Notes: generated by a model not told the origin, from the sequence alone. A stretch of 64,000 nucleotides of DNA from Penicillus capitatus (GCA_965649825.1 OZ287700.1:1364001-1428000), one strand, 5' to 3'. Positions 9,951 to 64,000 are shown, counted from the stretch's first letter. A program made the numbers and translations.

Positions 9951-10071
9951 GGCGTCGCACTCAGACGCGCCTTATCGATCTTTGTCGTTTCTCGACGCCG
10001 CCGGCACGAATGATGGATATGGATGGGTGGCATCTTTCTTGATGATGTGACAGTCGTGACATCAGTGGAGG

Positions 10072-10823: not shown

Positions 10824-11096
10824 CGTTTGGGAGACGTACGTCACCATGCATGTGTGATTCAGGAAGTTGTTTTTTGAGTGGCTGCGTGACATAGAGACGT
10901 CCTGGCAGGAGTCAACCCAATCGAATGATATGCACCTTCCTGAGAGCAGTTCTCTATTTCATCGATTGTTCTGCAGGCAGAAGTGAGATATCGACCGAGT
11001 GGTCGCCCTCGCGACAGACAGACGCATTTAACTCGATTATGACCATCTGAGTGCGGATACGTGTCGTCGTCTAAACGCATTCATCCGTGTGACACG

Positions 11097-14927: not shown

Positions 14928-14996
14928 AATTTTTTCGTTTAACGATTGTGGCGACCCATCGTTTTGGTCGACGCGAATTTTTCTTGAAAACGCAGA

Positions 14997-21237: not shown

Positions 21238-22784
21238 ATGCGGACACTGCAATCGAGCACGGCCGGAACGAGCATCTCACTCAAAGCGTCTCCGTTTACA
21301 CTCCTCCACTCTTTCGCGAGGCGAAGGGAACGTGGCGCGACGTTTCGTTCGCTAAGCATCTCGGCTACGAAGCCCGCCGTCTCCGTCGGCCAGGCATCCA
21401 CAGCGGAAGACGATGACATCAGTTCCCCGGAAACACCCGTTGCGCCTTTGTGGCAAAAGGCCTTTTCAAAATGCGCCTCGCGGTTTACCCTGCTGGGACT
21501 GACAGTCTCGGCCCTGGGTCCCGCCCTCGGACTCGGTACCTCCTTTGAAACCGCAGATACCATTGCGCATCGCGGACGTCGTTTTAGGAAAGGGATTCGA
21601 TGGATCGGATCCGATCTCCGTCGCCAAGGCGCTCGGCATTCTCACAGTGGTCGTCGCCGTCCACGAGTGTGGGCATTTCTTGGCGGCGCGCCTGCAGAAC
21701 ATCCATGTGTCAAAATTTGCCATCGGATTCGGGCCATCTCTGCTTACTTATCAAGGACGCATTGTCGAGTATTCGCTGCGCGCTTTGCCTCTCGGAGGCT
21801 TCGTCGCTTTCCCCGATGATGATCCGAAGTGTCCGTATCCAGAAGACGATCCAGATCTGCTCAAGAATCGACCCATTCGAGATCGAGCCATCGTCATCAG
21901 TGCAGGCGTTCTGGCCAATGTCCTCTTCGCTTTTGTCATCCTCTTTGTCCAAGTGGCCACATCCGCTGCATCCCTACAGCGAAAAGGCGTGCGTTTGTGC
22001 AGGCGTCGACGGTTGGGATCACCGCAGAGGTGTTGGAACCGGGGGTCATTATTCCCCAAATCCTCAAAGACTCGGCAGCAGACCAAGCTGGTGCGCCACG
22101 ATCTCTGCAAATGATAGATATACCGACCCATGTGATGATGTGACAGGTATTAATCCAGGGGACGTCATTTTGGAGATGGATGGGGTGCTGACAGCCCCTG
22201 AGCCTTCTGCCGTTGGCGTCGTCATCGATTCCATTCAGTCCCATCCTAACCGACCCCTCACCCTTCGACTCCAACGCAACGACAAGGAACTGACGCTCCA
22301 AGCCACACCGACTCAAGGAAGCAAGGGTGAAGGACGGTTGGGCGTTCAACTCGTCTCCAAGTATCATCTCACCACTCGTGTCGCCCAGAATGGTCTCCAG
22401 TCCCTGCAGCTCGCAACATCTGAGTTTCTGAGACTGAGCGGAGAGATTCTGAGAGGACTTCAGCAATTGATCTTCAATTTCTCCCAGTCAGCTGAGAAGG
22501 TATCGGGGCCGGTTGCCATTGTGGCTATGGGTGCCGAAGTGGCGCGTCTCAATGCTCCACAACTCTATCTCTTTGCCGCTGTGGTCAATCTCAATCTCGC
22601 TGTGGTGAATACCTTACCCCTCCCAGCACTGGATGGCGGCTACTTTGCCCTGCTGATGCTCGAAATCGTACGTGGAGGAAAGAAACTGCCGCGTGGTGTC
22701 GAACAGAGCGTCACGGCATCGGGTATTCTCTTTCTAATGGCAGTGGGCTGCTTCTTAGTCGTCCGTGACATCACCGCACTTTAA
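21238..22784 (+). CDS. rseP: plastid RseP/site-2 (M50) metalloprotease with PDZ domain
   Basis: HECGH (HExxH), FAIGFGP, LPLGGFV, ISAGVLAN, NLAVVNTLPLPALDGG; transit-peptide-like N-terminus. Confidence 0.93.
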
Positions 22785-26225: not shown

Positions 26226-26909
26226 TTAGTATTGACACCAACAACGTGTGCATTGTCCTTGGCAGTCACCCTTGCAGTCAATCACATTTCCTAGAGCTTT
26301 GGGTTTGCGTAAGATGGCTTTGATGCGATGCGGTCCTTTGAGAAAGAAATTCTTCTGCAGATAATCGACGTTTGGTTTTAATCGAGTGACGAGGTCAAAG
26401 GCTAAGAACTCTGGAAACTGTCGGACGAGTCTTTTCAAATCCTCGTCATCAAATCCGATGCCTCTCATGTATTCCATATTCGCTTCCATCTACAGCGGCC
26501 GTCACGATCTGCCATTTGTTTCGAGAGCCATCACCTGTGCAGGATCTGGCATTTCTTGGTGTTTTTCATTCCTCCAGTACTTCTGTGTTCCCCATCCGAA
26601 TGCTTGTGCCAAGCAGCTGTCGAGTTCGTCTGCCTCGAGATCAAGGCGTTCAAGCAGTACTACCGCTTTCTTCCACTGAGCGTCATCCTTGGCACTCGCC
26701 CATTCCGAACTCGATGCAGCCCGTTGCACATAAAGAGCACGACGCCAGGCGAAGGTTGTTGCTGTTCGCTGTGGAAGACGACCACAGACGTGAGTGTCTC
26801 GTACGCCGTTGGCGGCCTTAGGGACGCGGCACGTGGTAGACGGTCGGGAGTACCCGTCGAGTGGGCGGTTGAATGTCATCGGTGGAGAGTGAACGATGCA
26901 AAGTGGCAT
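26226..26909 (-). CDS. mTERF family protein (plant mTERF12-like)
   Basis: QAFGW..., LVRQFPEFLAFDLVTRLKPNVDYL, C-terminal DCKGDCQGQCTRCW; transit-peptide-like N-terminus. Confidence 0.8.
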
Positions 26910-26959
26910 GTTGCACGACGTCAACGAGAGCATTTGTGACTGACTGACTGACTGTCTGC

Positions 26960-29900
26960 ATGAAGTGGGCAGTATCTGGCGACCGTAGATCCAGAAAGGA
27001 AATACTCTTTCTCGCAAACGGGTGCGTGATGCCGCGCAGACATCTGTGCGTCGCTCGAACGCATATGCGTCGTCCTTGTAGCGTCCTTGTCGCCATCGCC
27101 GTCTTGTTGCTCGCCTGCGAGACCGCCGGCGACTCGACGTTTAGACTCGGCGCTGTCCTGAGCACGCAAGGAGAGACGGCAACGATGTCCGAAGCGCGAA
27201 ACGGCTATGAACTCGTTGTCCGTCGAGTCAACGCCCAATCATTGGGGCGCGGATTTCTGGTCGGTGGCCAAAACGAAACGCGAAGATTCCACTTTAAATA
27301 CGACTTCACTTGGCGCGAAGACAAAAGCGACCGGGAGATCCATGCAAAGCAGTTTGAAAAATTGATAAAGAGAGATAAGGTGCACTTTCTCGCTGGGTCA
27401 CATCCGAACTATGCAGCCGATGAGATGCGAATCGCCAATGAGAGCCAGCTTCTGAACTATCAGTGTTGTGCTGGACCCGATGAGCTTTATGCACAGAACT
27501 ATCCCACAGTCTTCGGTCTGCCTGCCTCAAACAAGCAATACACAAAGAACTCCATACGAGCCATCGGTCTACAGGGTGTCGGCAAGATAATGCTGGTATA
27601 CGATGAAGAAAGCGTTTTTACCCGGACGACATGCGAATCTGCCATCCGCTATTTCAAAGAGACAGAATCTGTCATGTCCGGACAGACGCCGCCGATCGTT
27701 GTGAAGTTTGGAAGAGAGAAAAGAGACATGTCGCGTTTCTTTGTGGACGTGGCGAAGGAGGCTCAGGAGTGCGGCGTGGAAGTTGTCTATGCTTGTGTCT
27801 TTCCGAATGAAGGCAAAAAACTCGTCAATGCTATGCATGACATCAGATATGCACTGAGGGCTTTCTTTTTGACAACGGGCCCCACGAAGCAGGACTGGAT
27901 CGATGGATTTGATCCGGCGTTTCGGGCGAATGGTCTACTCAGTGCAGCGCAGTGGCATCCGAATCTCCGATTTAGAGATCATGTGATGGGCTCTGCTGGT
28001 GAGTACGCGGATTTGTATTCGAGGACGTTCAATGGACAGAAACCATCCTACGTTGCGGCTGCAGCGTCGGCAGTGGGCGTCACCCTGACAATGGCAATCC
28101 AGGATGCATTCCATAGCTGTGACATCTCACAGACAAACGGCGACGTGGAATTACTCCTCTACCATCCCGCCACCATTCGATGTGATGAACCATTGGGCAG
28201 AACTGGTTACGAACGCGTATTGACCGCTTTATGGAAACTGAATAGAGAGACGTTTTTTGGATTTGTGAAGTTCAATGATTTTCGACGTAATGATGGACTG
28301 GAGACGGTGACGACACAGGTCTGTGAAGATAGAGGAGAAAATGGAAGCATTGTACGCAAGATCGAGGTTGTGTTGCCAGTGCAGTCGGCAACGCACCTGT
28401 TGAAATTCCCTGCAGAGAATTTCTACAGAGAGAAATGTCGCCCCGGATACAAACAGAATATAGATCCGTTTCAAGAATGTCTTCCGTGTCAACCTGGACA
28501 GGCGTCACACAAAACGGACGCTGAACATTGTGACCGATGTCCGCTTGGAGAATGGACAAATCTGACAGCGCAATCTGAGTGCTCTATGTGTCCTGCTGGC
28601 ACAACAACTCAAATGAGAGGAGCGCACTGTATAGAAGAATGCAAATGCAAAGTGGGTTACTTCAACGCCGCCGGGGAGACGGGCGTCGCCTGCGATCCGT
28701 GTCCCGTCGGCGCTCTCTGTCCGGGAGGAACGGAGCTGCCGATTCCTCTCCAGGGATACTGGGCGAACGAGACACGCCGGTCGGAGATCTACGCGTGCGA
28801 CGACGCCTCCGTCTGCACGGGAGGGAACGGCAACGCCTGTCGACAGGGCCACACCGGAAGGTAATCTCTCACTCTCACTCTCTCGGTCGCGGTGGACGAC
28901 CTCTGTCTGTCTGTTCCCAGGATGTGCGCGCAGTGCGAGGACGGATACTTCAACGCGCTCAACGGGTGCCACAGGTGCCTGGACAGGGGCGTCATCGTCT
29001 TCCTCTCCGTCGCCCTTCTGGTCGGCTGGTACGTGATCAACGTCACCGTCTCCAGGAGCGTCACCTCCCTGGAGATGATGCTAGGGTGGGCGCAGCTGGC
29101 CAACATCATCGGCGACATCAACCTGAACTGGACGCAGAACGTGACGACGATGTTCGGCGTGGCCAACCTGCTCGACTTCGACGTCGACATCCTGGAGCCG
29201 GGCTGCGTCGTCGAGTGGGGCTTCCGCGCCAACTTCATCACGCAGCTGCTGTTGCCGTTCGTGATGTCGACCATGGCGGCCAGCGGATACCTGCTGTCCG
29301 CCGCCGTCCACCTGCTGATCCGCAGCGGGAGGCTGAAGCTGGACGAGCGCACCGAGCGCCTGCTGTCCGTCTTCGTGGTGGTGTCCGGAGACGGCGAGCA
29401 GCTCAAGGCGAAGTGGGACGCCACAGTGGCCACGTTCCTGTCGGCGGTGGACGTCACCTACGTGACCATCGCCAAGTACTGCTTCGACGTCTTCAGGTGC
29501 GAGGAGATCGCCGGCGTGTCGGTGCTCAGGGAGTCGCCCGACGTGCTCTGCGGAGATTTCTACCACCTGTCGCTCAAGCTGCTCTCCGTGTCGGGGATCG
29601 TCTTCTACGTCGTCGGCTACCTCGTCTACCTTCTGTGGAAGCTCTACGATCTGAGGACGCGCTGCGCGTTCGCCGACGCGGCGAACCTTCGGCGCCTCGG
29701 ATTCGTCTATCAGAAGTTCGAGCTGGACTACTACTTCACGCCCGCCGTCATCATCGTCCGCAAGCTCCTCTTCGTCCTCGTGCTGGTCTACGTGAACAAT
29801 CCAGCATTTCAGATTGGACTTCTGTCCATCGTCCTCAACACGTCGTTAATGATTCAGGTGTACACAGCTCCGTATGTGGACACCTACTTTGACGTCCTAT

Positions 29901-31171
29901 TCAGTTTTCTGCTCGTCGCCTTAATGTTTGAAGCCTTTGGCGGGTTAATGTTCTATAGTGAGAACCTGCCTGACGATAACCGACGCATTCTGGAATGGTT
30001 GGTCATCACGTCATTATTGATGTTGACGGTCGTTTTTCTGGTGACCCTCTGTATGGAGATCGCCAAAAAGTTCTGCATGAAATACGTTAAAAGAGCCCAA
30101 GTACTATACGTCAAAGATGACCTTAGACGAAGCCTGAAGAGGGACACATCCGCCCATAGACAGATTTCGACCCGTTCAGCCTTCTCGCAAACTTTTCTCC
30201 GCTCAATGTCGTCAAGGACAGAACATGAAATTAGCTTTGAACTCTTGGAGACTTTTCGACCAAGCTTCGTATACAATAGCATCCGCAAACAGCCGGAATC
30301 GATCAAACAATGGAATGAGCTATCAAACAAACTAAAAGACTACATGTCTGACCAGTCAGACACCGCATATCTCTCGATGAATCCAGTTGCCAAATTCTGG
30401 AGAAAATTAGTGGATCGTTTCCCGGAGCTGGTGGATTTCTTGGCCGTCGCGGATGATGAAACACGCGAGAAATTCAAAACTGTCGCCACCTGTCTCTTCC
30501 GTGATTTCTATCTCACAAACAAATTGACACCGTTGCCGCTGATGGACGTCCTGAACTGGAGAGATCGTGCTCCAATGGCACAGTGGCTGGCCGTAGCGCC
30601 GCCAAAACATCGCGAGTTCTTTCTTCATGTCATGGCCGAGATGTTCGAAAGCAACGAGAACAATGAAGCTGCCGTGATCTTACGATCGAGACTCCACAGT
30701 GGACGACGACGTTTCGACCCTCTGATGGAGAATCGCCGATGGGTTCGAATGAACCGCAGCATCAGCCGAGTTCTGTCCAGTCTGTCAAACGGACTCAGTC
30801 CATTTGATCACACGGCTATGTTTCCCGTCATCCATCTGCCTGGCCATCCGACGCGACCGCCGCCATTTCAGGGAAGGCGTCATCGCGGAACTCTTGAGAT
30901 CATGGTTCAGGATGAACGACGTCCAGTGGCACCAATGACACCGATACCTGGTAGTGAAAAATCGCTGGCCCATGTGGCGGCTGTCTCTGACGGTTCCGCA
31001 TCAGAGATCCGGTCATCTGAGGCACCTGACGAAATTTGCGTAGAGACCTCATCCGCTGGCGAGAGCTCTTCTTCGGCGAAAGATGGATCGGAGAACGAAC
31101 AAAACAACAGCAGATCGCCACGATCTCGGAACAATAATTCGACGTCTCTCGAAGCTGAAACTGACGCTTAG
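26960..31171 (+). CDS. receptor-like protein copy 1: signal peptide + Venus-flytrap/type I periplasmic-binding domain + Cys-rich repeats + about 8-9 TM + cytoplasmic domain; single intron 28861-28920
   Basis: FRLGAVLSTQG...NGYEL...VN...EDKSD...LIKRDKVHFLAGS; QWHP; YVAAAASAVG; FFGFVKFN; CxxCxxG repeats; RLGFVYQKFELDYYF...RKLLFV...PAFQ...APY membrane domain. The true ATG may be 27029 or 27065. Confidence 0.8.
28645..29817 (+). repeat. 1173-bp near-identical segment, copy A (matches 33546-34718)
   Basis: Same length; about 7 exonic differences seen plus a few in the 60-nt intron; abrupt divergence on both sides. Confidence 0.95.
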
Positions 31172-31980
31172 CATCATAATACTCCCCTCCATCGATTTCA
31201 TTCAGGTGACAGACATTGTTGGATCACCTACTGTTTTTTGCTTTTGATTCTATTTCCTCTCATCTGATTCCGCCGTGATGAGTATAGCCACTCTTTGGAT
31301 TCTTTTAGTCGAAACTGTGGGCGATTTGATGATGGGTGGATATTCTACATACAATTCCTGTCGAATCCGTTCATCCACTTGATCCGTTCCATGGGTGTTG
31401 CACTAGTCATTTGTTGTTCGATGATCTTTTCCTTACCTAGCGTATTTGGCTCTTCCCTTTTCTCAGTAGAGTATAGATTTGATGGTCAGTCGTAGAAAGA
31501 CGCCTTCGAATGGGGTCCGTTGAGTCAAATTTTGTCAGTCAAGGTCTCAGATGCAGCCGCCAATCAAAGCGATGTACGTTGAACAAATAAACACCATGGT
31601 CTGTGACGCAGCTCAGGCGACGTTGAGAAAGCCAACAACGCACTCACTCATCACCAATGCATCCTGCCAGATATGAACGCACCGACCTCTATCCCGTGCG
31701 GATTGTTTAGACATGAGAAGGACTTCTGAGAATGTTCAAACACGTGTGTGTGTAAGCCCCTCCTATGTGTTCTGATGCATCCGTCATCATTGCCTCGACC
31801 GAATATCCACTCCGAACCGCTCACTCTCATCTTCACGTACACAGGCAGTAACACCCGCGGTATCGTCAGAATCACACCGCATGCAACAACCAGATATCCA
31901 AGACGCGTTGCTCTCTGTGCTAACCATCAGATGCTTTCTTAGCGAGGCAGCGTCGAGACAACAGTGTTGTAATTGGCAGT

Positions 31981-34900
31981 ATGTATGTGTTTGTGGCTTT
32001 GGTTTTGTTACTCGTAAGGACCCGATGTGATTCCGCATTTCGCGTCGGTGCTGTGCTGAGCACAAAGGGCTCGACGAAAGAGATGGAGCAGGCGAAGAAT
32101 GGATACGCTTTGTTCTTTGACGCCATAAACGAGCGAAATGGCGGCCAGGGGTTCCTTGTTGAAGGAAGGAATGGCACCAAGGGATACTGGTTTCGCTATG
32201 CGTTTCTATCACGTGAAGACGCCAGCGACTTCGCCGTTCACCAACGGCAACTCGACGAGCTGATGACGAAAGAGAAGATTCACTTTCTCGGAGGATCCCA
32301 CTTGCACTACGATCGCATGGAAGTGAAGGCTGCCGTTGACAACGGTGTCCTTCTTTACAAGTGCTGTGTGGATGCGAAAATGCAGTCCCACGACAACAGT
32401 CCGTTTGTTTTTGTCATTCGAACGTCGAAAATGGTCTACACGCACAAATTCCTGGCGGCTTCGGTCCTTGCTGGAAGCCTTCGCTATGGTTTCGTGGTCG
32501 ATGTGGGCGAACCGAGCTTCATGTATGCGTACTACGGAGCATTGGCCTTACTGCAGGAGACGTCTGTTCTCAAGAAAGGCGTCAACAACATTACCTACGT
32601 GAAACTGTTCAATTCTTCCGAGGCTGAACCCACAGCTCAGCTGTTTCGAGAGGTTGCTCGGGCAATGAAGCACCAGAGGGTGGATTCGTTGATTGCAGCT
32701 GTTAACGCCGATCACGGCAAACATATTGTGAACGCATTGCACGAAGCGCAGTACTCTTTAAAATCGACCTTCATCATGAGAGGCCCGACGGACCAGGAGT
32801 GGGTCGATGCGTTTGAGGATGACAATCGAGTGGAACGCCTGGTCAGTACTGTTCAATGGCATGAGAAACAGAACGACCACGATGACTTCTTTGGGAAGAC
32901 AGCTGTCTACGTGGATATGTACACAAGACGATATGGAGAGAAGCCGACGAGCTACAGTGCTGGAGCGAGTGCTGTCGGGGCGACGCTGACCCAGGCCATC
33001 CAGAATGCGTTCGCTCACTGCGACATCTCAAAGACGCATGGTGACGTGGATACGCTTCTCTACTCTCCAGAGGCGATTGATTGTGAGGATGATCTTGGAG
33101 ACAGAGGATATGATCGCGTGCTGGCATCTCTGCAGGCAATCGATATGCAAACGTTCTTTGGTTTTGTCAAGTTTGATCGTTATCGACGAAATCTGGCAAA
33201 CAAATGCGCCACCACTCAGGTGTTCGTGACCACGTCAGCGAATGGAGCGAAACACAGAGATATTGAAGTTGTCCTGCCAGTCGGTGTTGCATCGCATGAG
33301 GCCGTCCTTCCCGCGAAGAATTACTATAAAGAGGTCTGCATGCCAGGGACCTTTGTAGGACCAGATGATTTCAATCCGTGCGTCGAGTGCAGCGAAGGGG
33401 AAGCGTCCTATGAGAAGAACGCGCCGTTTTGTGATAGTTGTCCGGTTGGCGAATGGAGGGATAAAAAAGGGGGATCGAGTTGCAATACGTGTCCAGAAGG
33501 GACAACAACAGCTGCGAGAGAGTCGACAAACCTGAGCGATTGCATATGCAAAGTGGGTTACTTCAACGCCGCCGGGGAGACGGGCGTCGCCTGCGATCCG
33601 TGTCCCGTCGGCGCTCTCTGTCCGGGAGGAACGGAGCTGCCGATTCCTCTCCAGGGATACTGGGCGAACGAGACCCGCCGGTCGGAGATCTACGCGTGCG
33701 ACGACGCCTCCGTCTGCACGGGAGGGAACGGCAACGCCTGTCGACAGGGCCACACCGGAAGGTAATCTCTCACTCTCTCTCTCCCAGTCGCCGTGGACGA
33801 CCTCTGTCTGTCTGTTCCCAGGATGTGCGCGCAGTGCGAGGACGGATACTTCAACGCGCTCAACGGGTGCCACAGGTGCCTGGACAGGGGCGTCATCGTC
33901 TTCCTCTCCGTCGCCCTTCTGGTCGGCTGGTACGTGATCAACGTCACCGTCTCCAGGAGCGTCACCTCCCTGGAGATGATGCTGGGGTGGGCGCAGCTGG
34001 CCAACATCATCGGCGACATCAACCTGAACTGGACGCAGAACGTGACGACGATGTTCGGCGTGGCCAACCTGCTCGACTTCGACGTCGACATCCTGGAGCC
34101 GGGCTGCGTCGTCGAGTGGGGCTTCCGCGCCAACTTCATCACGCAGCTGCTGTTGCCGTTCGTGATGTCGACCATGGCGGCCAGCGGATACCTGCTGTCC
34201 GCCGCCGTCCACCTGCTGATCCGAAGCGGGAGGCTGAAGCTGGACGAGCGCACCGAGCGCCTGCTGTCCGTCTTCGTGGTGGTGTCCGAGGACGGCGAGC
34301 AGCTCAAGGCGAAATGGGACGCCACCGTGGCCACGTTCCTGTCGGCGGTGGACGTCACCTACGTGACCATCGCCAAGTACTGCTTCGACGTCTTCAGGTG
34401 CGAGGAGATCGCCGGCGTGTCGGTGCTCAGGGAGTCGCCCGACGTGCTCTGCGGAGATTTCTACCACCTGTCGCTCAAGCTGCTTTCCGTGTCGGGGATC
34501 GTCTTCTACGTCGTCGGCTACCTCGTCTACCTTCTGTGGAAGCTCTACGATCTGAGGACGCGCTGCGCGTTCGCCGACGCGGCGAACCTTCGGCGCCTCG
34601 GATTCGTCTATCAGAAGTTCGAGCTGGACTACTACTTCACGCCCGCCGTCATCATCGTCCGCAAGCTCCTCTTCGTCCTCGTGCTGGTCTACGTGAACAA
34701 TCCAGCATTTCAGATTGGTGCCATTGCTGTGGTCATTATTGCCTCGCTGATGGTGCACGTCTACACTGCTCCCTACGTTGACACCTATCTGGATGTCCTC
34801 TTCAGTTTCCTTCTCATTGCTCTCATGTGCGAAGCTTTCGGAGGACTAATGTTTTACAGCGAGAACTTGCCAAACGATGACCGCAGAATTCTGGAAATCG

Positions 34901-35970
34901 TGGTCTTGACTTCAAATCTCCTGGTTGTCGGCGTGTTCATGACATTCTTCGTCATAGAGTTGATCAAGAAGTATCACGTTCGATACATCACCTCGAAGCT
35001 CATTAAGTTCGCAAGAGACGAGATCGAAACCGTCGGTTGTCTCTTCTTACATCGTCTCTCCTCTCGAAAATCCCCCGCCTCTAGTGAAGCCTCTGTCAAT
35101 CATGGATCAGACAAGGACGACAGTACCCCTTTCGATCTCTTGGACACCTTCAATCCCCGCTTCGTCCACAATGCCCTCAAGAAGAAACCCTCACTGATCA
35201 AAGACTGGGACACAGTGAGCCGCATGCTGAAAAATTACATGTCCGATCAGTCCGAGAGTTCTTATCTCTCGATGAATCCCGTTGCCAAATTCTGGCGAAA
35301 GCTCGTGGACCGTTTCCCGGAGCTGGTGGATTTCTTGGCCGTCGCGGACGACGAGACCCGTGACAAATTTGAAGACGTTGCCAAATGCCTCTTTCGCGAT
35401 TTCTATCTCACCAACAAAGTGATACCGCTCCCTCTTATGGATGTCCTCAACTGGCGAGACTACGCTCCCATGTCTCAGTGGCTGGCCATTGCCGACGACA
35501 GCGATCGAGCGTTCTTTTTCCAGACAGTCGCCCAGATGTTCAAGAACAATGGAAATCATACGGCTGCCGGTGTTCTGATGTCCAAGATCCGCAACGGAAG
35601 ATACGACCCTGATCTGCATGGCCGTGGACTGAGACATTTGCGTTCGCTCTCGCATCTTCAGCAATCGGCTCTGTCGAGTCTTAAGGAAGGATTGCATCCG
35701 TTTACCCATTCCGCCTATCGCCGTTCGCTGGATCCTGATTCGCTCGTGAATCGGCGCATTAGCGATTTCTTCGAGGCACTGAGTAAAGAATCGAGTGAAT
35801 CCTCGCGTTCGCCCACACCTTCGCCGAACGATCATCCTTCGCACAAAGATACAGACGCTGACCTGGTGCCAGATAACATCGATGGACAGCCATCTGCTGA
35901 GAACAACGTATCGAATTCCAACTCCGAAACGGCGAAGCCTCCGCACGGTGTCGGAAAACTTACGCCATAA
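31981..35970 (+). CDS. receptor-like protein copy 2 (same architecture); single intron 33762-33821
   Basis: MYVFVALVLLLVRTRCDSAFRVGAVLSTKG...; Cys-rich repeats; TM domain; shared cytoplasmic YLSMNPVAKFWRKLVDRFPELVDFLAVADDETR. Confidence 0.8.
33546..34718 (+). repeat. 1173-bp near-identical segment, copy B (matches 28645-29817)
   Basis: Direct comparison by eye; offset 4901 bp. Confidence 0.95.
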
Positions 35971-36609: not shown

Positions 36610-38318
36610 ATGAGGATGGCACGAAAGATCGCTTTCGGTGCCTTGTCTCTGCCTTTCTGTCACTTTCTCGTTTCCACAGAGTTCGATAGAGACAACGCCG
36701 TTGCTCTGCTCAGTTGTGTGCCTCGCACACTTCGCGCTGTGCGATGGGCCCTTTCTGCTGGTTGGGACTACTGCACCCACATGCACTCTCCGTCGTCGAC
36801 AGACTGGTTCGCCTTGCATCGTCACTGGGCAGAGGCTTTAACGTCCGTATGCAAAGCAAATGGCGGTGTTTATGTCAAAGTATCCAAATCAGAAGCAAGA
36901 CCTGCTGTGAGCCGTCTTGAGTAGGTGGCTCAGATGCTCTCAACTTTTGGAGCGATTCCAGAAGCGTATCGAGTGAGATTAGGTCAGTTGCATGACCATT
37001 GCACTCCAAAGCCTTTTGAAAGCATACACAAGTCTCTGAGCAAAGAACTGGGAGACGGATATCGATCGCTCTTTCATCGAATCGACGAAGTGGCAACAGC
37101 TGCGGCGTCTATCGCCCAAGTCTGCCATCCCAGGCCAAATGGCGTCTCTCACATGTGCATCCAGGTGCATCAAGCAGAGCTCAAATCTGGACAGAAAGTG
37201 GCAGTAAAGGTACAGTATCCAGCACTGAAGAAAGCTATCGGAGCCGATCTCAATTGCCTCCTGGTCTTGACCAGAGTCTCGGATTTTATCTTTCCACACT
37301 ACCCAACACATTGGATGATTGAGAAAGTCGAAGAACAGATCGCTGAAGAGATGGATTTTGGCGTCGAAGTTCGCAATGCACAGATGCTTGAAAGCAGAAT
37401 GCATCATCGCAAAGATATCCGGTCCAGTATACACCTCTACCAGAACCATTCTTCGATGTTTGTCTGCTGGTCAGGATCCCGCAGATGTTTGAAGAACTCT
37501 GCACGTCACGTCTGTTGGTTATGGAATGGATCGATGGATGCAAACTCTCCGATTGCCAATGCTTGCGACGCAGAGGGATCAATCCACGGAGCGTGGCATT
37601 GACGCTTGTCGATGCATTCTCCGAGATGACTCTCATTCACGGTTTCATTCATGGTGATCCGCATCCTGGAAACCTCCTCGTCATTCCTACACCGTACCCT
37701 CAACTGCAATCCCGTTGAGATTATTCAGTCCATCCTTTTAGTTTCGAGAAGAGAGAGCATTGGCTGTGGAGGTTGCTCTCTTTTCAGTGGCGCACGCCGT
37801 TTCAACTGGTGCTGCTGGATCACGGGCATTACCTGGAAATAGATCATGCCACACGGCGCGACTATTGTGAGCTGTGGTGCAGTCTTGTTCGCGGCGATCA
37901 GCGCAGTGCCATCGAGGCAGCAACTCGGATGTGTCACGACGCTTCGGGTGGTCGATTGTTGCCCAATGTTCTCTATCGCCCTTTCGATCAGCGTACCAGA
38001 CGAAACCTTCGTTCCAGCATGAGCATGGCTGACCTGGTGCACCTTCTCAAGTCTGCTCCCCAGACGCTGGTCGATGCACTTCGCATCGTTGCCGTCGTGC
38101 GTCACGTCGCGACAGCTTTGGCAGATATCAAAGCCGATCGACCATATATCGAAGCGATGCATGCTTGGAATGGCCTTCTGTTGGAGGATAAGATGGAAGC
38201 CAATTTCCGGATCGCCTGGCGTGTCGAATTTCGAGTGAAACTGCGTCTGTGGATCATGCGTCTGGCAATGTGGCTTCGCGACATCTCATACAGCTGGGAG
38301 CTTTTTCGAGACGTCTAA
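36610..38318 (+). CDS. ABC1/UbiB atypical kinase (ADCK1/5-like)
   Basis: NGGVYVK|VAQ, AAASIAQ|VH, VAVKVQYP, EEMDF, IHGDPHPGN, LVLLDHG. Confidence 0.9.
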
Positions 38319-38363
38319 ACTTCATGATACATCGCAGTGCAGCGAAAGGTGTTTTTGAGAGCG

Positions 38364-38931
38364 TCAGTGAAAAACAATTTGTCGTTTGTACAGCGAGTGA
38401 AGCTCCTTGGAGAGTTTTTGTTTCATAAGGTGCCTGTCGCGATGATAAACCCATTCTTCGTTTTCGTAATCGTACCGAAAAGGGCCGCTACCAAACCACA
38501 CCCCTATCGACAAGGACGCCAAACCAGCGAGTGTGTGATACCTGATGGGAGATGACAACCAGATCTGCTTGTTCGGCGCTTGTTTGTTGATGACATAGGT
38601 TCCTTTCGTCCCCATCTGAACCGTAACGACTCCTTGCTGCACAAACACTGGAGCAAGGGACAGGGATTGCAGTGAGGTACTGAGTATTGAATGTCGACAT
38701 CGGATGAAGGGATCTGTTCAAAATACTCTTCCAGATCTTCGACGAGCACGTCGAGACTGCGATCCGCCACTCGATGGTACTCCAGTTCGCTCAGCACGCC
38801 TCTTCTGCCATCCATTCATAACAGGATGCTGGACTTTGTTGAGAAGGGCGTTACACGGCTGAGGTCGTCGAGATCCATGTTGACCACCGCGCCTCTTTTG
38901 CGATAACGCCGTCCAAAATACGACGCAGCAT
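38364..38931 (-). CDS. FXN: frataxin
   Basis: YHRVAD...DIQYS|QGVVTV...[20 protein letters not shown]|SGPFRYDY. Confidence 0.95.
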
Positions 38932-39013
38932 GAGAGAGCATCTATCGTACGTGATGCGACTTCCAGGCGAAGGAACCCTAATCGAACAGTATCGTTTCGG
39001 GTGCTCTAAGAAG

Positions 39014-40024
39014 ATGTTGCAGTCTTTATCGCGTTCTGTGCGCCCGGAGGCGATCGCAACGCGCCGACGGGGAAAGGGACGGAGCAATGGCGGATGGGCT
39101 CTGCGACGAAAAGCCGAAGGGCTTAAGAAACCCGTTGGATTTCGATCCAGTCTTTTTCAAAGTGCTCCTAAAATCGATCCTCGCCGAACGAACAAACGAA
39201 CATGCACTGTCTTTCAGGCGTCGCACTGTTTAGGAAACAAAACCACAAAAGGCGGCCGGGTCGAGACGACCATGTAGGTTTAGAAGTGCAAAACCATAAG
39301 TCACACGGGACATGTCTTGCAGAGAGTCGTCGAAGCACGAGTAAAAGATCCAGATATGGATTTTGAAGAAGAAGAGGATCCAGACAAAGATCCGCCTACC
39401 CCATTTTGGTGCACCGCTGCTGCTTTTATGTACTTGGTCCCATGGATCGACATCGTTGGCATGGGCCGGGAAGTCTATCACAAGTTTCCCATATTGTGCT
39501 ACTTCTACTTCGGAGCCTGTCTTGCTCTTCTCACTCTTTCCTGCTTCTCACTCTTTTGCTTTAGCACCGTTCTTTGGCATCTATTACAGCAGCCAGTTTG
39601 CACCGTTGATTATCTTCTTCCTTATGTTTCTGGCGATCGTCAAGAACAAAAAGCTCGCACACTTTGTGCGGTTCAACTGTATGCAGGTCACACTTTGCCG
39701 AAGCCAAAAGGCTTTTATCCTAGAGAGCGAGATGTGGGTGTTCTAGGCTATTATGTTGGACATTGTTGTGATGCTTTTCACCATTCTGCACACCTATCTC
39801 CCAGCTGAAGTGAGATGGAGTTTCTTACTCCCACTGTTTGACATGTGCTCTTGGATCTGGTGCATGACGACCATCGTCTATTGCGTTTTCTTCACTCTCA
39901 GGTACAAAAGAACATCTCATCGCACACCCTCTCACTCCTCTTTGCATACAGAGGTGTCTATGCCGATATCCCCCTAATCTCGGAAGCGGTCTACATTCAA
40001 GTGGAACTGTCAGAGTATGCTTGA
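39014..40024 (+). CDS. TIC20: Tic20 family plastid inner-envelope protein
   Basis: YLVPWID, FFLMFLAIVKNKKLAHFVRFNCMQ|AIMLDI, G.YADIPLISEAVYIQ. Confidence 0.85.
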
Positions 40025-40225
40025 CACCTTTTGTTGGACGGGTCTTGGGATCATCTACATGATCTTTATTGGGCTAATGATGAGGCATGCGTTTAAGTCA
40101 AATCTGCCATTCCTTCAGTCGTCACGCTCTTTGCGCGCAACAAATTTCTTTTTGCGTCGTGAAGCTCGATTCTCCGCTTTTAAGAGATAGTGTGTCGCTT
40201 CACTTGTGTGTTTCGACGAAGCTTC

Positions 40226-40810
40226 ATGGATTCTTCCGCCGGTTCAGATTTTACTTTCACTTCTGACGTCGACTTCCCGAACAAAGTGAAGCTGAGAAAG
40301 CGGATTCCCTTTTGGCTTCTGGAACTCACCATCGGTATCGACCATGACCGATTGAAGCACACTCTTAAACCAGCTTGCGTCATCAAAGTGCGTCAAACTC
40401 GCCGTTATTGGCATCTTTACGTCCCTTCAGCCTGAGTGCAATGCAGGACAAGTTTCTCAAGGGGATCATTGACCTGAATGTCGGGGAAAAACGTGTCGAG
40501 TATCGTAAAGTGTGCGGGATTCCTTTCGTTGGTCAGTTGGTACTGAATGCGGGATTCAATTACCGGAACCCTTTGAGAACTCCGAGAATAGGCAAAACAG
40601 ACACTGTTCACCGTTCAATGTCGACATCTCCATGTTTATGCGCCTGTAGGGATTCATTTCTCGACATCTGGACCAACGGCTGTGGTCAGTGGCGAGGCAA
40701 CAAGATTTGATCAGAAACTCTCATTGGGCAAGCGCGTCGGCTTAGAGGTAAACATACACAACGGCGAAAATAACAACGATCCGGACAAACGCTCGCGCAC
40801 TTACGCTCTC
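40226..40810 (+). CDS. uncharacterised beta-strand-rich protein; 3' end unclear
   Basis: Spliced MDSSAGSDFTFTSDVDFPNKVKLRKRIPFWLLELTIGIDH...|DKFLKGIIDLNVGEKRVEYRK with GT-AG junctions. Confidence 0.5.
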
Positions 40811-40811
40811 T

Positions 40812-62411: not shown

Positions 62412-64000
62412 ATGACGACAATGGGTCATTACGCCATTTCGATCGCTCAACCACTTTCCTCGATGCCGTGTGCGTTGCTCCTCTTGTTTCTCGCGAGCCT
62501 TGTGAAATGCGACAACTCCACTTTTCGTTTCGGGGCTGTACTCAGCACAGAGGGCGATACGGCTGCGATGATAGAGGCTAAATTCGGATACGAACTTTTC
62601 TTTGATACTCTAAACGCTCGCTCTGACGGTCGAGGCTTTTACCTGAGCGGCAAAAACGCGGTTGATGGATTCTACTTCAAATTCGACTTCCTCTGGCGCG
62701 AAGACTCCAGCGACGCAGACATCCATGAGAGAGAAGTGAAAAGACTGATAGAAGAAGACAAAATCCATTTCTTGGGCGGCTCTCATCCAACATATGCAGA
62801 AAAAGAAATGAGTATGGCGAATGATAGCGGCATCCTTAACTATCATTGTTGTGTCGGACCTGATGCGCTTTACGAGCGAGATCGACGTACCGTGTTTGGC
62901 GTCCAGGCATCCAATAAGGAATATACCAAAACGATCATCCGAACGTTGGCTTTGGCAGAAGTGGGTGCTCTTGCGTTCGTATATGGAGAAGATAATGCAT
63001 TCACGCGGACAACGTGTGAAGCTGGCATCAAGTTTGCTGGCGAAATGGGGGCAGTGCATGTGGAGAACTCCACACATTTCATTCGCACATTCAACCAATC
63101 CGTGCCCGACTCAGATTTCTTAGACGATGTGGTGAGGGGAGTGAAGGAACAAGCCATTACAGCTGTGATCGCATGTGTCTTTCCGGATGCAGGGAAGCTC
63201 CTCGTTGATGCATTTCACGATAATGAGTACCCACTAAAGGCGTTTTTTCTCACAACGGGGCCCACAAGACAAAAGTGGGTAGATGGATTTGATCCCAAGT
63301 ACCGAGCACATGATCTCCTGAGTGCTGCCCAGTGGCATCATGATATGAAGTACACCGATAGCTTCTTCGGATCGGCTCTGGGATACACCGAATTGTACCA
63401 GGACAAATTCGACAATCATTTGCCAGCCTATACGTCCGCAGGCGCCTCAGCTGTTGGGTTGACACTTGTGGAAGCCATGAAGCACGCCTTTATGTCTTGT
63501 GACATATTGGCCACGGAAGGAAATGTGGAGAAGCTTCTCTACGATGCTGACGCTGTCGTGTGCGATGACGAGAAAGCGATACGCGGCTATGATCGTATAC
63601 TGGAAGCTCTGGCTGATTTAGACATGGACACGTTCTTCGGTGGAGTGAAGTTTAACTTCTACCGAAGGAACGTAGGGATGGATCCAGTGACAACCCAAGT
63701 CTTCAAGCGAACGTCGCAAGCTGGAAAAGAATACGCAGAAATCGAAGCTGTTCTGCCTTTGGGATACGCGACGGAGTTGATGAACTATCCCGCAGAGAAC
63801 CATTACAAAGAAGTCTGTGGGCCTGGTTACTACGTTGGAAGCGATTCCTTCTCACCATGTGTGATGTGTGAACCAGGAGAAATCTCCGATCAAAATAACG
63901 CCAAACATTGCGACAGCTGTCCAGTGGGTTATTGGACAAATAAACCTGGTCAGCACAAGTGTGAACTGTGTCCAGAAGGAACACATACAGAGATTCGAGG
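62412..64000 (+). CDS. receptor-like protein copy 3 (Venus-flytrap + Cys-rich repeats), runs off the window
   Basis: MTTMGH...ALLLLFLASLVKCDNSTFRFGAVLSTEG...IHFLGGSHPTY...YHCCVGPD...AQWH...FFGGVKFN...CELCPEG; open to the window end. Confidence 0.85.
   Translation, partial: MTTMGHYAISIAQPLSSMPCALLLLFLASLVKCDNSTFRFGAVLSTEGDTAAMIEAKFGYELFFDTLNARSDGRGFYLSGKNAVDGFYFKFDFLWREDSSDADIHEREVKRLIEEDKIHFLGGSHPTYAEKEMSMANDSGILNYHCCVGPDALYERDRRTVFGVQASNKEYTKTIIRTLALAEVGALAFVYGEDNAFTRTTCEAGIKFAGEMGAVHVENSTHFIRTFNQSVPDSDFLDDVVRGVKEQAITAVIACVFPDAGKLLVDAFHDNEYPLKAFFLTTGPTRQKWVDGFDPKYRAHDLLSAAQWHHDMKYTDSFFGSALGYTELYQDKFDNHLPAYTSAGASAVGLTLVEAMKHAFMSCDILATEGNVEKLLYDADAVVCDDEKAIRGYDRILEALADLDMDTFFGGVKFNFYRRNVGMDPVTTQVFKRTSQAGKEYAEIEAVLPLGYATELMNYPAENHYKEVCGPGYYVGSDSFSPCVMCEPGEISDQNNAKHCDSCPVGYWTNKPGQHKCELCPEGTHTEIR

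What the first reader, a model, noticed from the sequence alone, without database searches (positions are those of the whole stretch)
26960..35970. Expanded family of Venus-flytrap + Cys-rich + multi-TM receptors (class C GPCR-like architecture) in an alga
Seen: two complete tandem genes plus a third at 62412, each with a signal peptide, an approximately 500-aa domain showing type I periplasmic-binding hallmarks (GAVLSxxG, FLxGS, QWH, TFFGxVKF), CxxCxxG repeats, about 8-9 hydrophobic segments and a long tail. Established: VFT-CRD-TM is the layout of mGluR/CaSR/T1R receptors, and plant GLRs couple a related domain to a channel. Inference: the membrane part (LGFVYxKFxxxYYF...RKL...PxxQ...PY) looks more like the FLC/Pkd2-type TRP-like domain of protist giant membrane proteins than a class C 7TM. 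This may be an uncharacterised small-molecule chemosensor family, either GPCR-like or a ligand-gated channel.
Basis: partly seen in the sequence, partly recalled or inferred. Interest (0 to 1): 0.85.

Follow-up and report, generated by a model that had tools for sequence, protein, structure and literature searches.

The report
Algal flytrap receptors with Flc/Pkd2-type membrane domain
A siphonous green alga carries a small family of genes that join a nutrient-binding "Venus-flytrap" sensor, like that of animal taste and glutamate receptors, to a different, poorly understood membrane module known from yeast calcium-channel candidates; nobody appears to have studied this type of receptor.

Summary
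The window has two complete tandem two-exon genes, G1 (27065-31171) and G2 (31981-35970), and a third copy, G3, that starts at 62412 and is cut by the window end. Each encodes about 1,300 aa:
- a signal peptide;
- a LivJ-type bilobed binding domain (Pfam above threshold; AlphaFold2 pLDDT 88; Foldseek E = 5e-23);
- a cysteine-rich stalk of about 160 aa;
- a membrane domain of about 370 aa with 8-9 helices;
- a conserved helical cytosolic domain of about 140 aa with no known relatives;
- a disordered tail.

The membrane domain is not a class C 7TM, an iGluR pore or a canonical six-helix TRP channel. It belongs to the Flc/Pkd2 "TRP-like" superfamily (Pfam PF06011). Close paralogues pass the Pfam threshold; G1 and G2 themselves do not.

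Named full-length relatives are all Bryopsidales and all annotated as hypothetical. In the wider protist superfamily, other sensor domains (ANF_receptor, sugar- and phosphate-type binding proteins, Cache) sit on the same membrane core, and some members have cytosolic EF-hands.

My best reading is a small-molecule sensor that controls a cation or Ca2+ pathway. This is inferred, not shown. In the 1,173 bp covering the end of the stalk and the first six predicted helices, G1 and G2 are 99% identical through gene conversion, while their sensor domains are only 40% identical. I rate it a new variant of known kinds, of moderately high interest.

The parts
27065..31171 (+). G1, complete gene. Exon 1 is 27065-28860, the intron 28861-28920 and exon 2 28921-31171 including the stop. 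It encodes 1348 aa from M36. The in-frame ATG at 26960 is probably not the start.
   Evidence: ORFs; splice sites; translation; junction validated by the alignment to full-length homologues; start matches gene call P0035.
27065..27133 (+). G1 signal peptide (MRRPCSVLVAIAVLLLACETAGD)
   Evidence: Hydropathy peak of 1.97; helix of low pLDDT ahead of the folded domain. The cleavage site is judged by eye.
27134..28429 (+). G1 Venus-flytrap domain (type I, LivJ-like periplasmic binding fold; aa 24-455)
   Evidence: Peripla_BP_6 at 43 bits against a threshold of 31.7. AlphaFold2 pLDDT 88, pTM 0.76. Foldseek E = 5e-23 to 8wch, with target-normalised TM-scores up to 0.82 to LivJ/LivK-type proteins. 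dN/dS 0.11.
28430..28978 (+). G1 cysteine-rich stalk (aa 456-618), interrupted by the intron: Ephrin_rec_like, a weak NCD3G match and DUF7630
   Evidence: Ephrin_rec_like 30 bits against 23.1; NCD3G 24.3 against 38.9; DUF7630 25.4 against 27. The cysteines are invariant across the family. Foldseek alignments to CaSR run through this region.
28979..30079 (+). G1 membrane domain (aa 619-985): most likely nine helices, N-terminus outside and C-terminus inside; Flc/Pkd2-type (PF06011 superfamily)
   Evidence: Hydropathy; AlphaFold2 helices, pLDDT 69; PF06011 hits in paralogues; 7,377 relatives among cluster representatives; dN/dS 0.08.
30230..30649 (+). G1 conserved all-helical cytosolic domain (aa 1036-1175; core motif AKFWRKLVDRFPELVDFLAV...NWRD), with no known family
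   Evidence: Conserved blocks; also present in Chrysophaeum P0008 and in distant hits that cover profile positions up to about 555; no Pfam or NCBIfam hit; only a marginal PDB hit, E = 0.019; dN/dS 0.03-0.18.
30650..31168 (+). G1 Ser-rich tail, poorly conserved and probably disordered
   Evidence: The alignment is gappy and unconserved here; dN/dS 0.33.
31981..35970 (+). G2, complete gene (1309 aa). Exon 1 is 31981-33761, the intron 33762-33821 and exon 2 33822-35970. Domains: signal peptide 31981-32031; flytrap 32032-33330; stalk 33331-33879; membrane domain 33880-34980; cytosolic domain 35125-35544; tail 35545-35967.
   Evidence: Domain boundaries were mapped from G1. dN/dS: flytrap 0.14, stalk 0.11, membrane domain 0.09, cytosolic domain 0.03.
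62412..64000 (+). G3, partial third paralogue (signal peptide, flytrap, start of the stalk), cut by the window end
   Evidence: Translation; 49% identical to G1; 90% identical to the exon-1 product next to P0014, whose membrane exon scores 30.4 bits on PF06011.
28645..29817 (+). Gene-conversion tract, G1 side (partner in G2: 33546-34718): 1,173 bp with 12 mismatches, covering the end of the stalk, the intron and the first six predicted helices
33546..34718 (+). Gene-conversion tract, G2 side

Best explanation
**Shown.**
- G1, G2 and G3 are expressed-type nuclear genes under purifying selection, from a green alga of the Bryopsidales kind.
- Each encodes a multi-pass membrane protein whose N-terminus is secreted.
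- The N-terminal part is a LivJ-type Venus-flytrap domain on a disulfide-rich stalk. This is the same ectodomain plan as in class C GPCRs.
- The membrane domain belongs to the Flc/Pkd2 'TRP-like' superfamily (PF06011). It is followed by a conserved helical cytosolic domain.

**Inferred mechanism.**
1. A small ligand, most plausibly an amino acid or another small carboxylate, closes the flytrap.
2. The rigid stalk passes the movement to the membrane domain of about nine helices.
3. That domain then opens or modulates a cation/Ca2+ pathway, by analogy with fission-yeast Pkd2.
4. The conserved cytosolic domain regulates or relays the signal.

**Evolution of the paralogues.** They keep one common transducer, which gene conversion homogenises, while their sensor domains diverge. 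This suggests different ligands feeding one output.
For: **Ectodomain**
- Pfam hits lie above threshold.
- The AlphaFold2 model has pLDDT 88.
- The best structural matches are amino-acid or organic-acid binding proteins: L-pyroglutamate, Val, Leu and hydroxybenzoate binders, E = 5e-23 to 1e-18.
- CaSR and mGluR ectodomains align over 550-590 of the 598 residues.

**Membrane domain**
- PF06011 is matched by 16 of 28 family members, best 43.6 bits.
- 7 of 10 paralogues exceed the 28.5-bit threshold.
- The matches always map to profile positions of about 150-420, on the last six helices.

**Modularity in 37 distant relatives**
- 23 have PF06011 and 23 have Ephrin_rec_like.
- Ectodomains include ANF_receptor (8), Peripla_BP_6 (5), Peripla_BP_4 (2), Peripla_BP_1, PBP_like_2, Cache and DOMON.
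- Six carry cytosolic EF-hand pairs, as in P0063.
- Swapped sensors on one transducer are the signature of a receptor family, and EF-hands point to Ca2+.

**Function of the reference family**
- Reconstituted S. pombe Pkd2, a PF06011 protein, passes Ca2+ when the membrane is stretched (PMC9727806).
- Its AlphaFold model has nine helices plus a cytosolic tail (bioRxiv 10.1101/2022.08.11.503631).

**Selection and evolution**
- dN/dS is 0.03-0.18 in every folded domain of both genes.
- The transducer tract is kept 99% identical while the flytraps are 40% identical.
Against: - G1 gives no PF06011 hit and G2 only 12 bits, so membership rests on homology to paralogues.
- The channel function of PF06011 proteins is itself 'putative'. 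No member has a solved structure: the family profile finds no PDB relative of the membrane domain by sequence, and the model has no fold match better than E = 0.36.
- The membrane model is of moderate quality (pLDDT 69, pTM 0.57). It shows eight clear helices, so the ninth crossing is inferred.
- The loops between the last four helices are 12 residues or fewer, which leaves no room for a TRP-type pore loop.
- Yeast Flc proteins have been linked to endomembranes and to flavin transport, so a plasma-membrane sensor role is not assured.
- No ligand, localisation or expression data exist for these genes.
Confidence: 0.5

Rival explanations
1. Metabotropic (non-channel) receptor. Flytrap closure changes the conformation of the membrane domain, and the signal is read by the conserved cytosolic helical domain and the Ser-rich tail through partner binding or phosphorylation, with no ion flux. 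It would work like a GPCR without being one.
For: - A cytosolic domain of about 140 aa is strongly conserved (dN/dS 0.03-0.18) and travels with the membrane domain even in a pelagophyte.
- Some distant relatives carry SH3 domains.
- No pore loop is recognisable, and there is no structural match to any channel.
Against: - There is no similarity to any GPCR 7TM family.
- The only functional data for the membrane family point to Ca2+ flux (PMC9727806).
- EF-hands in relatives fit a Ca2+ pathway at least as well.
Confidence: 0.25
2. Transporter or transceptor with a fused binding protein. The flytrap captures a nutrient and hands it to the membrane domain for uptake, as in bacterial transporters with fused substrate-binding domains.
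For: - The ectodomain is closest to substrate-binding proteins of ABC importers.
- Relatives carry sugar-, phosphate- and betaine-type binding domains.
- The yeast Flc proteins were named flavin carriers (PMC9600462, abstract).
Against: - A Cys-rich stalk of about 160 aa holds the binding domain away from the membrane, as in receptors.
- Cache and DOMON ectodomains and cytosolic EF-hands in relatives are signalling features.
- There is no similarity to any known transporter fold.
Confidence: 0.15
3. Not a chemosensor. It would be a Flc/Pkd2-like mechanosensitive or homeostatic membrane protein, for wound or turgor responses of a giant coenocyte, in which the flytrap and stalk act as an extracellular anchor or wall-binding module.
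For: - Pkd2 is activated by stretch (PMC9727806).
- Ephrin-receptor-like repeats also build structural proteins such as the mastigoneme protein Mst1.
- The named members come from siphonous algae.
Against: - The flytrap is under purifying selection as a whole (dN/dS 0.11-0.14) yet diverges strongly between paralogues (40% identity).
- Relatives swap in other small-molecule sensor domains.
- This pattern is expected for ligand recognition rather than anchoring.
Confidence: 0.08
4. A true class C GPCR (mGluR/CaSR/T1R family) with a divergent 7TM.
For: - The flytrap-plus-stalk ectodomain superposes on CaSR and mGluR.
- There are weak NCD3G hits.
Against: - None of 28 members matches 7tm_3 (PF00003).
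- No class C 7TM appears among the fold matches.
- There are eight or nine helices, not seven, and paralogues match PF06011 instead.
Confidence: 0.02

Closest known systems
Class C GPCRs (mGluR, CaSR, T1R, GABA-B)
   Same: Signal peptide, type I Venus-flytrap domain, then a disulfide-rich stalk directly ahead of the first membrane helix. The whole ectodomain superposes on CaSR and mGluR (Foldseek E about 1e-19, 550-590 aligned columns).
   Different: The membrane domain is unrelated: no 7tm_3 hit, eight or nine helices, PF06011-type. The flytrap scores better on the bacterial-type Peripla_BP_6 model than on ANF_receptor. The stalk is ephrin-receptor-like, with only sub-threshold NCD3G similarity.
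Fungal Flc/Pkd2/TrpR 'TRP-like' proteins (Pfam PF06011; S. pombe Pkd2, S. cerevisiae Flc1-3)
   Same: Signal peptide, extracellular or lumenal domain, about nine helices and a cytosolic tail. Paralogues pass the PF06011 threshold over the last six helices. Pkd2 is modelled with nine helices and passes Ca2+ (bioRxiv 10.1101/2022.08.11.503631; PMC9727806).
   Different: The fungal proteins carry a small Ig/ML-like N-terminal domain rather than a flytrap plus stalk. G1 and G2 themselves score below threshold. The first three helices and the conserved cytosolic domain fall outside the region that matches PF06011 (profile positions of about 150-420).
Ionotropic glutamate receptors and plant GLRs
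   Same: The same idea: bilobed binding domains coupled to an ion pathway in one polypeptide.
   Different: There is no Lig_chan pore domain and no split S1-S2 ligand-binding domain. The membrane fold is different.
Canonical TRP and polycystin channels (six helices with a pore loop)
   Same: Only the historical name 'TRP' attached to PF06011, and a presumed link to Ca2+.
   Different: No Ion_trans or PKD_channel hit. TRPM8 appears only as noise (E = 2.6, TM-score 0.12). The loops between the last helices are too short for a pore helix and filter.
Bacterial sensors that use solute-binding or Cache domains (chemoreceptors, sensor kinases)
   Same: The same repertoire of extracellular sensor modules (type I and II binding proteins, Cache) placed on one conserved transducer, as seen across the wider superfamily.
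   Different: This is a eukaryotic multi-pass transducer of a different fold, with no kinase or MCP signalling domain.

Membership tests
Type I periplasmic-binding / LivJ-like fold (Pfam Peripla_BP_6) | HMM match above the curated threshold | tested here: met
   G1 scores 43.0 bits and G2 39.1 bits against a threshold of 31.7.
Type I periplasmic-binding / LivJ-like fold (Pfam Peripla_BP_6) | Bilobed alpha/beta fold with a hinge | tested here: met
   AlphaFold2 pLDDT 88.3 with alternating strand-helix units. Foldseek E = 5e-23 to 8wch, and target-normalised TM-scores of 0.75-0.82 to LivJ/LivK-type proteins.
Type I periplasmic-binding / LivJ-like fold (Pfam Peripla_BP_6) | Binds a small ligand in the cleft | not testable with these tools
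The only sequence link to a solved structure is 4mlc at E = 0.0016.
Class C GPCR | Venus-flytrap ectodomain | tested here: met
Class C GPCR | Nine-cysteine domain (NCD3G) between the flytrap and the membrane | tested here: inconclusive
   NCD3G scores 24.3 bits against a threshold of 38.9 in G1, and is weak in some paralogues. A Cys-rich stalk is present and aligns structurally with the CaSR ectodomain.
Class C GPCR | 7tm_3 (PF00003) seven-helix domain | tested here: not met
   None of 28 members hits it at E <= 0.01. There is no class C match for the membrane model. Eight or nine helices are present.
Class C GPCR | G-protein coupling | not testable with these tools
   This needs an experiment.
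Flc/Pkd2 'TRP-like' family (Pfam PF06011) | HMM match above the threshold in G1 and G2 themselves | tested here: not met
   G1 gives no hit and G2 12.3 bits against a threshold of 28.5.
Flc/Pkd2 'TRP-like' family (Pfam PF06011) | Homology to proteins that pass the threshold | tested here: met
   Paralogues 53-62% identical to G1 over the whole membrane exon score 29.9-43.6 bits (7 of 10 above 28.5), with consistent profile coordinates. In the distant sets, 5 of 7 and 23 of 37 relatives also hit PF06011.
Flc/Pkd2 'TRP-like' family (Pfam PF06011) | Topology: N-terminus outside, about nine helices, cytosolic tail | tested here: inconclusive
   There are seven strong, one moderate and one or two weak hydrophobic segments, and AlphaFold2 draws eight long helices. 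Nine crossings are inferred from the conserved Cys in the loops (C80, C178, C195), the NWT/NVT sequons and the positive-inside rule.
Flc/Pkd2 'TRP-like' family (Pfam PF06011) | Small ML/Ig-like N-terminal domain (TRP_N) | tested here: not met
   No such hit. A flytrap plus stalk takes its place.
Flc/Pkd2 'TRP-like' family (Pfam PF06011) | Ca2+ permeation | not testable with these tools
   Known only for reconstituted S. pombe Pkd2 (PMC9727806).
Canonical TRP / polycystin channels | Six-helix unit with a re-entrant pore loop between the last two helices | tested here: not met
   No Ion_trans or PKD_channel hit. Foldseek to TRPM8 gives E = 2.6 and TM-score 0.12. The loop between the last two helices is about 11 residues (YSENLPDDNRR).
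iGluR / plant GLR | Lig_chan (PF00060) pore domain inserted in a split ligand-binding domain | tested here: not met
   No hit in any member.

The most novel reading that the evidence does not exclude
These proteins, and the thousands of protist relatives that put ANF-receptor, sugar- or phosphate-binding or Cache sensors on the same membrane core, are a third, independent way of wiring a Venus-flytrap sensor to the membrane: ligand-gated Ca2+-permeable channels of the Flc/Pkd2 type. If so, they would supply the first chemical agonists for a membrane family whose channel nature is still only 'putative'. They would also point to a major, unrecognised chemosensory system of algae and other protists.
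Probability: 0.35. Interest if true: 0.85.

Novelty: new variant of a known kind. Interest (0 to 1): 0.62.

Why it matters
Chemoreception in algae and most protists is poorly understood at the molecular level.

- **A new combination of known modules.** The sensor half is well understood (the class C-like ectodomain). The transducer half has no solved structure and no known agonist: the Flc/Pkd2 'TRP-like' domain, which is essential in fission yeast and linked to Ca2+ homeostasis and virulence in fungi.
- **An experimental handle.** A ligand for one of these flytraps would open and close that membrane domain on demand. That would make the long-standing question 'is it a channel?' directly testable.
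- **A built-in control.** Gene conversion has made G1 and G2 natural chimeras, with different sensors on the same transducer core.
- **Scale.** The wider superfamily has 7,377 cluster representatives at E <= 0.001, which suggests a large unstudied receptor class.

Tried and rejected
- **Class C GPCR, iGluR/GLR and canonical TRP/polycystin membership.** Rejected: no Pfam hits in 28 members and no fold match.
- **PDB search by sequence with the family profile.** Nothing was found for the membrane domain. The only two matches, SgdX2 (E = 0.086) and a Bcl-2 chimera (E = 1.2), fall in the cytosolic domain and are not significant.
- **Foldseek of the membrane and tail model against the PDB.** The best hit is E = 0.36 to a designed protein, which is noise. 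This is either a fold absent from the PDB or a model that is not good enough (pLDDT 69).
- **Cytosolic domain.** No Pfam or NCBIfam family. The one PDB hit, SgdX2 (8y9p), at E = 0.019 around FWRxLVxRFPE, is too weak to use.
- **Flytrap profile against PDB sequences.** Only one short motif match, to 4mlc, so pocket residues could not be mapped reliably.
- **Flytrap profile against the protein database.** It returned family members only, so the nearest bacterial relatives, and any horizontal origin, were not resolved.
- **Naming the species.** Three other window ORFs, used as given, were not in the collection. The order Bryopsidales is inferred only from the named homologues.
- **An error of mine, corrected.** In one search I mis-set the G2 domain boundaries by about 34 aa. 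One search gives the corrected values.
- **Literature.** Searches on PF06011, PF13458/PF07699, flytrap + TRP + algae, and Bryopsidales genomes found no description of this architecture. The Ostreobium genome preprint counts 'several transient receptor potential transporters' among its calcium transporters, and that count may include relatives.

Full report
**1. What is at the locus**

ORF listing shows two pairs of long + strand ORFs: 26960-28864 with 28892-31171, and 31981-33765 with 33793-35970. Each pair is joined by a 60-nt GT-AG intron at the same codon phase...GGAAG|GTAATC...CAG|G ATG TGC.

Splicing gives proteins of 1383 aa (G1, counted from 26960) and 1309 aa (G2). The junction (...QGHTGR|MCAQCEDGYF...) aligns without a gap to full-length, intron-free homologues found on mRNA-sized contigs (P0001, P0002, P0004). 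I therefore take the gene model as sound.

The ATG at 26960 would bury the signal peptide under 35 extra residues. The public gene call that is 100% identical (P0035) starts at M36, which is 27065, and I use that start (1348 aa).

A third copy, G3, starts at 62412 and runs off the window end. It is 49% identical to G1. tblastn finds no further copies or fragments in the window.

**2. The ectodomain**

Pfam places both proteins in Peripla_BP_6 (43 and 39 bits, threshold 31.7) and Ephrin_rec_like (30 and 32 bits, threshold 23.1). DUF7630 and NCD3G score below their thresholds.

An AlphaFold2 model of G1 residues 1-598, built on a 19-sequence alignment, is confident (pLDDT 88.3, pTM 0.76). It shows the alternating strand-helix pattern of a two-lobed binding protein, followed by a beta-rich Cys stalk.

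Foldseek against the PDB gives two groups of matches:
- Binding proteins for amino acids and organic acids. SAR11_0655 with L-pyroglutamate is the best, at E = 5e-23. Anabaena valine/keto-acid binders, LivJ/LivK and hydroxybenzoate binders follow, with target-normalised TM-scores of 0.74-0.82.
- Whole CaSR and mGluR ectodomains, at E about 1e-19, aligned over 550-590 columns.

By sequence the domain is far from every solved structure; only one motif matches 4mlc, at E = 0.0016.

**3. The membrane domain**

Hydropathy of G1, and of 83 aligned superfamily members, shows seven strong, one moderate and one or two weak hydrophobic segments. AlphaFold2 on 28 sequences gives eight long helices plus a beta-hairpin, at moderate confidence (pLDDT 69, pTM 0.57).

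I infer nine crossings, with the N-terminus outside and the C-terminus inside, on these grounds:
- The ectodomain is secreted.
- The three cysteines conserved across the superfamily (C80 at 100%, C178 at 92%, C195 at 90%) and the NWT/NVT sequons fall in loops that would then all face outwards.
- The Lys/Arg-rich loops and the Ser-rich tail would then face inwards.

This topology is an inference, not a result.

The domain is not one of the better-known membrane modules:
- None of 28 members hits 7tm_3, Lig_chan, Ion_trans or PKD_channel.
- The model has no significant PDB neighbour. The best is E = 0.36, and TRPM8 appears only at E = 2.6 with a TM-score of 0.12.
- The family profile finds no PDB sequence relative for it.
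- The loops between the last four helices are 12 residues or fewer, which leaves no room for a TRP-type pore loop.

Positive evidence points to PF06011, the fungal Flc/Pkd2 'TRP' family:
- It is matched by 16 of 28 family members.
- Seven of ten paralogues exceed the 28.5-bit threshold, the best at 43.6 bits.
- The matches always map to profile positions of about 150-420, on the last six helices.
- P0014, whose exon-1 partner is 90% identical to G3, scores 30.4 bits.
- G1 (no hit) and G2 (12 bits) fall short themselves. They are 53-62% identical to the paralogues that pass, over the whole exon.

The name 'TRP' should not be read as a shown fold.

**4. The cytosolic part**

About 50 variable residues follow the last helix. 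Then comes a block of about 140 aa that is strongly conserved (ELLxTF...W..L...L.D..SD.S..SYLS...AKFWRKLVDRFPELVDFLAV...NWRD...WLA) and is predicted to be all-helical.

This block has no Pfam or NCBIfam match. Its only PDB hit is marginal: SgdX2, E = 0.019.

The block recurs with the membrane domain in the pelagophyte protein P0008, and in distant hits that cover the profile up to about position 555. The final 140-170 residues are Ser-rich and unconserved.

**5. Who has it**

A first word-index search with G1 found only six full-length homologues, at 34-50% identity. An exhaustive profile search with the membrane and cytosolic region found many more: 7,377 cluster representatives at E <= 0.001, 1,687 at <= 1e-10 and 114 at <= 1e-30. 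Many are proteins of 1,000-4,000 aa with this domain at the C-terminal end.

The named members of the close, full-length subfamily are all Bryopsidales:
- Caulerpa lentillifera (2);
- Bryopsis sp. KO-2023 (5);
- Ostreobium quekettii (1).

All are annotated 'hypothetical' or 'unnamed'.

The window is part of ENA assembly ERZ25074695, contig ctg340425 (702,701 bp), which carries a fourth paralogue about 140 kb further along. A second assembly, ERZ26696514, holds the same tandem pair in conserved synteny, with Peptidase_M50 and an mTERF-like gene upstream and ABC1 and TIC20 downstream. It also has further paralogues on other contigs.

Plastid-related neighbours (TIC20, a ferredoxin-thioredoxin reductase subunit) fit an alga.

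**6. Modularity of the superfamily**

Seven distant members combine PF06011 (matched in five of the seven) with ANF_receptor (one, from Rhodelphis marinus, with two matched stretches), Ephrin_rec_like repeats, or a sub-threshold glycine-betaine-type binding domain.

In a further 37 distant members:
- 23 match PF06011 and 23 match Ephrin_rec_like.
- The ectodomains include ANF_receptor (8), Peripla_BP_6 (5), Peripla_BP_4 (2, E = 7e-53), Peripla_BP_1, PBP_like_2, Cache (dCache_2/sCache_2) and DOMON.
- Six carry cytosolic EF-hand pairs. In P0063 they lie directly after the membrane domain.
- One carries SH3 domains.

Different small-molecule sensor modules on one conserved transducer is the pattern of a receptor family. 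Cache domains in particular are signalling sensors rather than transport components, and EF-hands on the cytosolic side point to Ca2+.

**7. Selection and concerted evolution**

Against the orthologous pair in the second assembly (dS 0.06-0.6), dN/dS by domain is:

| Domain | dN/dS |
|---|---|
| Flytrap | 0.11-0.14 |
| Stalk | 0.11-0.12 |
| Membrane domain | 0.08-0.09 |
| Cytosolic domain | 0.03-0.18 |
| Tail | 0.28-0.33 |

All folded parts are therefore functional (for the corrected G2 boundaries).

Within the window, G1 28645-29817 and G2 33546-34718 differ at only 12 of 1,173 positions, with sharp edges. The tract covers the end of the stalk, the intron and the first six predicted helices. 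The flytraps of the two genes, by contrast, are only 40% identical.

In the second assembly the same tract is 97-100% identical between its two paralogues. The orthologues differ there by 4-15%, and even have different intron sequences. That is concerted evolution by recurrent gene conversion in both lineages: one shared transducer, diverging sensors and tails.

**8. How it most likely works**

Shown: the architecture, the fold of the ectodomain, the family of the membrane domain, and purifying selection.

Inferred: a small ligand, most plausibly an amino acid or another small carboxylate given the structural neighbours, closes the flytrap. The disulfide-rich stalk transmits this movement. The Flc/Pkd2-type domain then opens or modulates a cation/Ca2+ pathway.

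The last step rests on three things:
- the reconstitution of S. pombe Pkd2, which passes Ca2+ under membrane stretch (PMC9727806);
- its modelled nine-helix layout (bioRxiv 10.1101/2022.08.11.503631);
- the EF-hands in relatives.

I put about 0.8 on 'ligand-sensing receptor' and about 0.5 on the full statement including ion flux. The rivals are a non-channel (metabotropic) receptor that signals through the conserved cytosolic domain (0.25), a binding-protein-coupled transporter or transceptor (0.15), a mechanosensor or anchor with no chemosensory role (0.08), and a true class C GPCR (0.02, effectively excluded).

**9. Comparison with known systems and novelty**

The protein works like a class C GPCR on the outside and belongs with Flc/Pkd2 proteins in the membrane. 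It is a member of neither family as a whole.

I found no paper describing this architecture. The Ostreobium genome preprint counts 'several transient receptor potential transporters' among its calcium transporters without further analysis, and that count may include relatives. The searchable library is incomplete, so absence there is not proof.

I rate the finding a new variant of known kinds: a new combination of known modules, plus one unknown cytosolic domain.

**10. Limits**

- The model coordinates could not be inspected, so pocket residues and any pore could not be examined.
- No library of predicted cellular structures was available, so the direct fold comparison with Pkd2 or Flc models is still to be done.
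- There are no expression, localisation or ligand data.

Noticed in passing
window 28645-29817 and 33546-34718; L001 about 9800-10900 and 14700-15800: The two tandem paralogues are 99.0% identical (12 mismatches in 1,173 bp, sharp edges) across the end of the stalk, the intron and the first six predicted helices, while the rest of the genes is highly diverged. The same tract is 97-100% identical between the orthologous pair of a second assembly, although the orthologues differ by 4-15% there. This indicates recurrent gene conversion in both lineages.
   Followed up: yes
window 26960-27064: An in-frame upstream ATG would add 35 residues ahead of the signal peptide. A minus-strand ORF (26502-27017) overlaps it; at the corresponding position upstream of G1 in L001 and L006 there is a weak mTERF-like gene. 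The real start of G1 is probably 27065.
   Followed up: partly
window 27500-27530 (G1 'NYQCCAGPDELY'); the same motif occurs in G2 and G3: A vicinal Cys-Cys pair is conserved in seven of the eight aligned family members, the exception being P0006. It lies in the lobe-1 loop that aligns weakly with the S-P-x-A-S-T-S-P ligand-contact loop of the LivJ-type protein 4mlc. This is an unusual feature for a binding pocket.
   Followed up: partly
window 30230-30649 and 35125-35544: The conserved cytosolic domain has one marginal PDB match, to SgdX2 (8y9p), E = 0.019, centred on FWRxLVxRFPE. Its significance is unknown.
   Followed up: partly
window about 48300-59100, + strand: A run of + strand ORFs encodes coiled-coil-like, Glu/Lys/Arg-rich sequence with no Pfam hit, in a stretch with a strong purine (AT and GC) skew. 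It is probably one long multi-exon coiled-coil gene.
   Followed up: partly
window 60545-61237, + strand: By eye this ORF ends in a Cys/His motif (...CRLCGQSEETRQHILQCPH...) like the C-terminal zinc-binding region of non-LTR retrotransposon reverse transcriptases. There is no Pfam hit at E <= 0.001. It lies between G2 and G3.
   Followed up: no
window 1-26000 and 36900-42500: The neighbouring genes are ordinary eukaryotic or plastid-related ones: GNAT acetyltransferase (10023-10823), class I glutamine amidotransferase (13884-14927, - strand), SAM-domain kinesin (14997-17081), Peptidase_M50 (21600-22784), ABC1 kinase (36925-38318) and deoxynucleoside kinase (41437-42438, - strand). Their order is conserved in the second assembly.
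   Followed up: partly
L001 (ERZ26696514 ctg303812) versus the window (ERZ25074695 ctg340425): Two public 'metagenome' assemblies contain long, high-coverage contigs of two related but clearly distinct algal genomes (dS 0.06-0.6 at this locus). Neither carries an organism name.
   Followed up: partly
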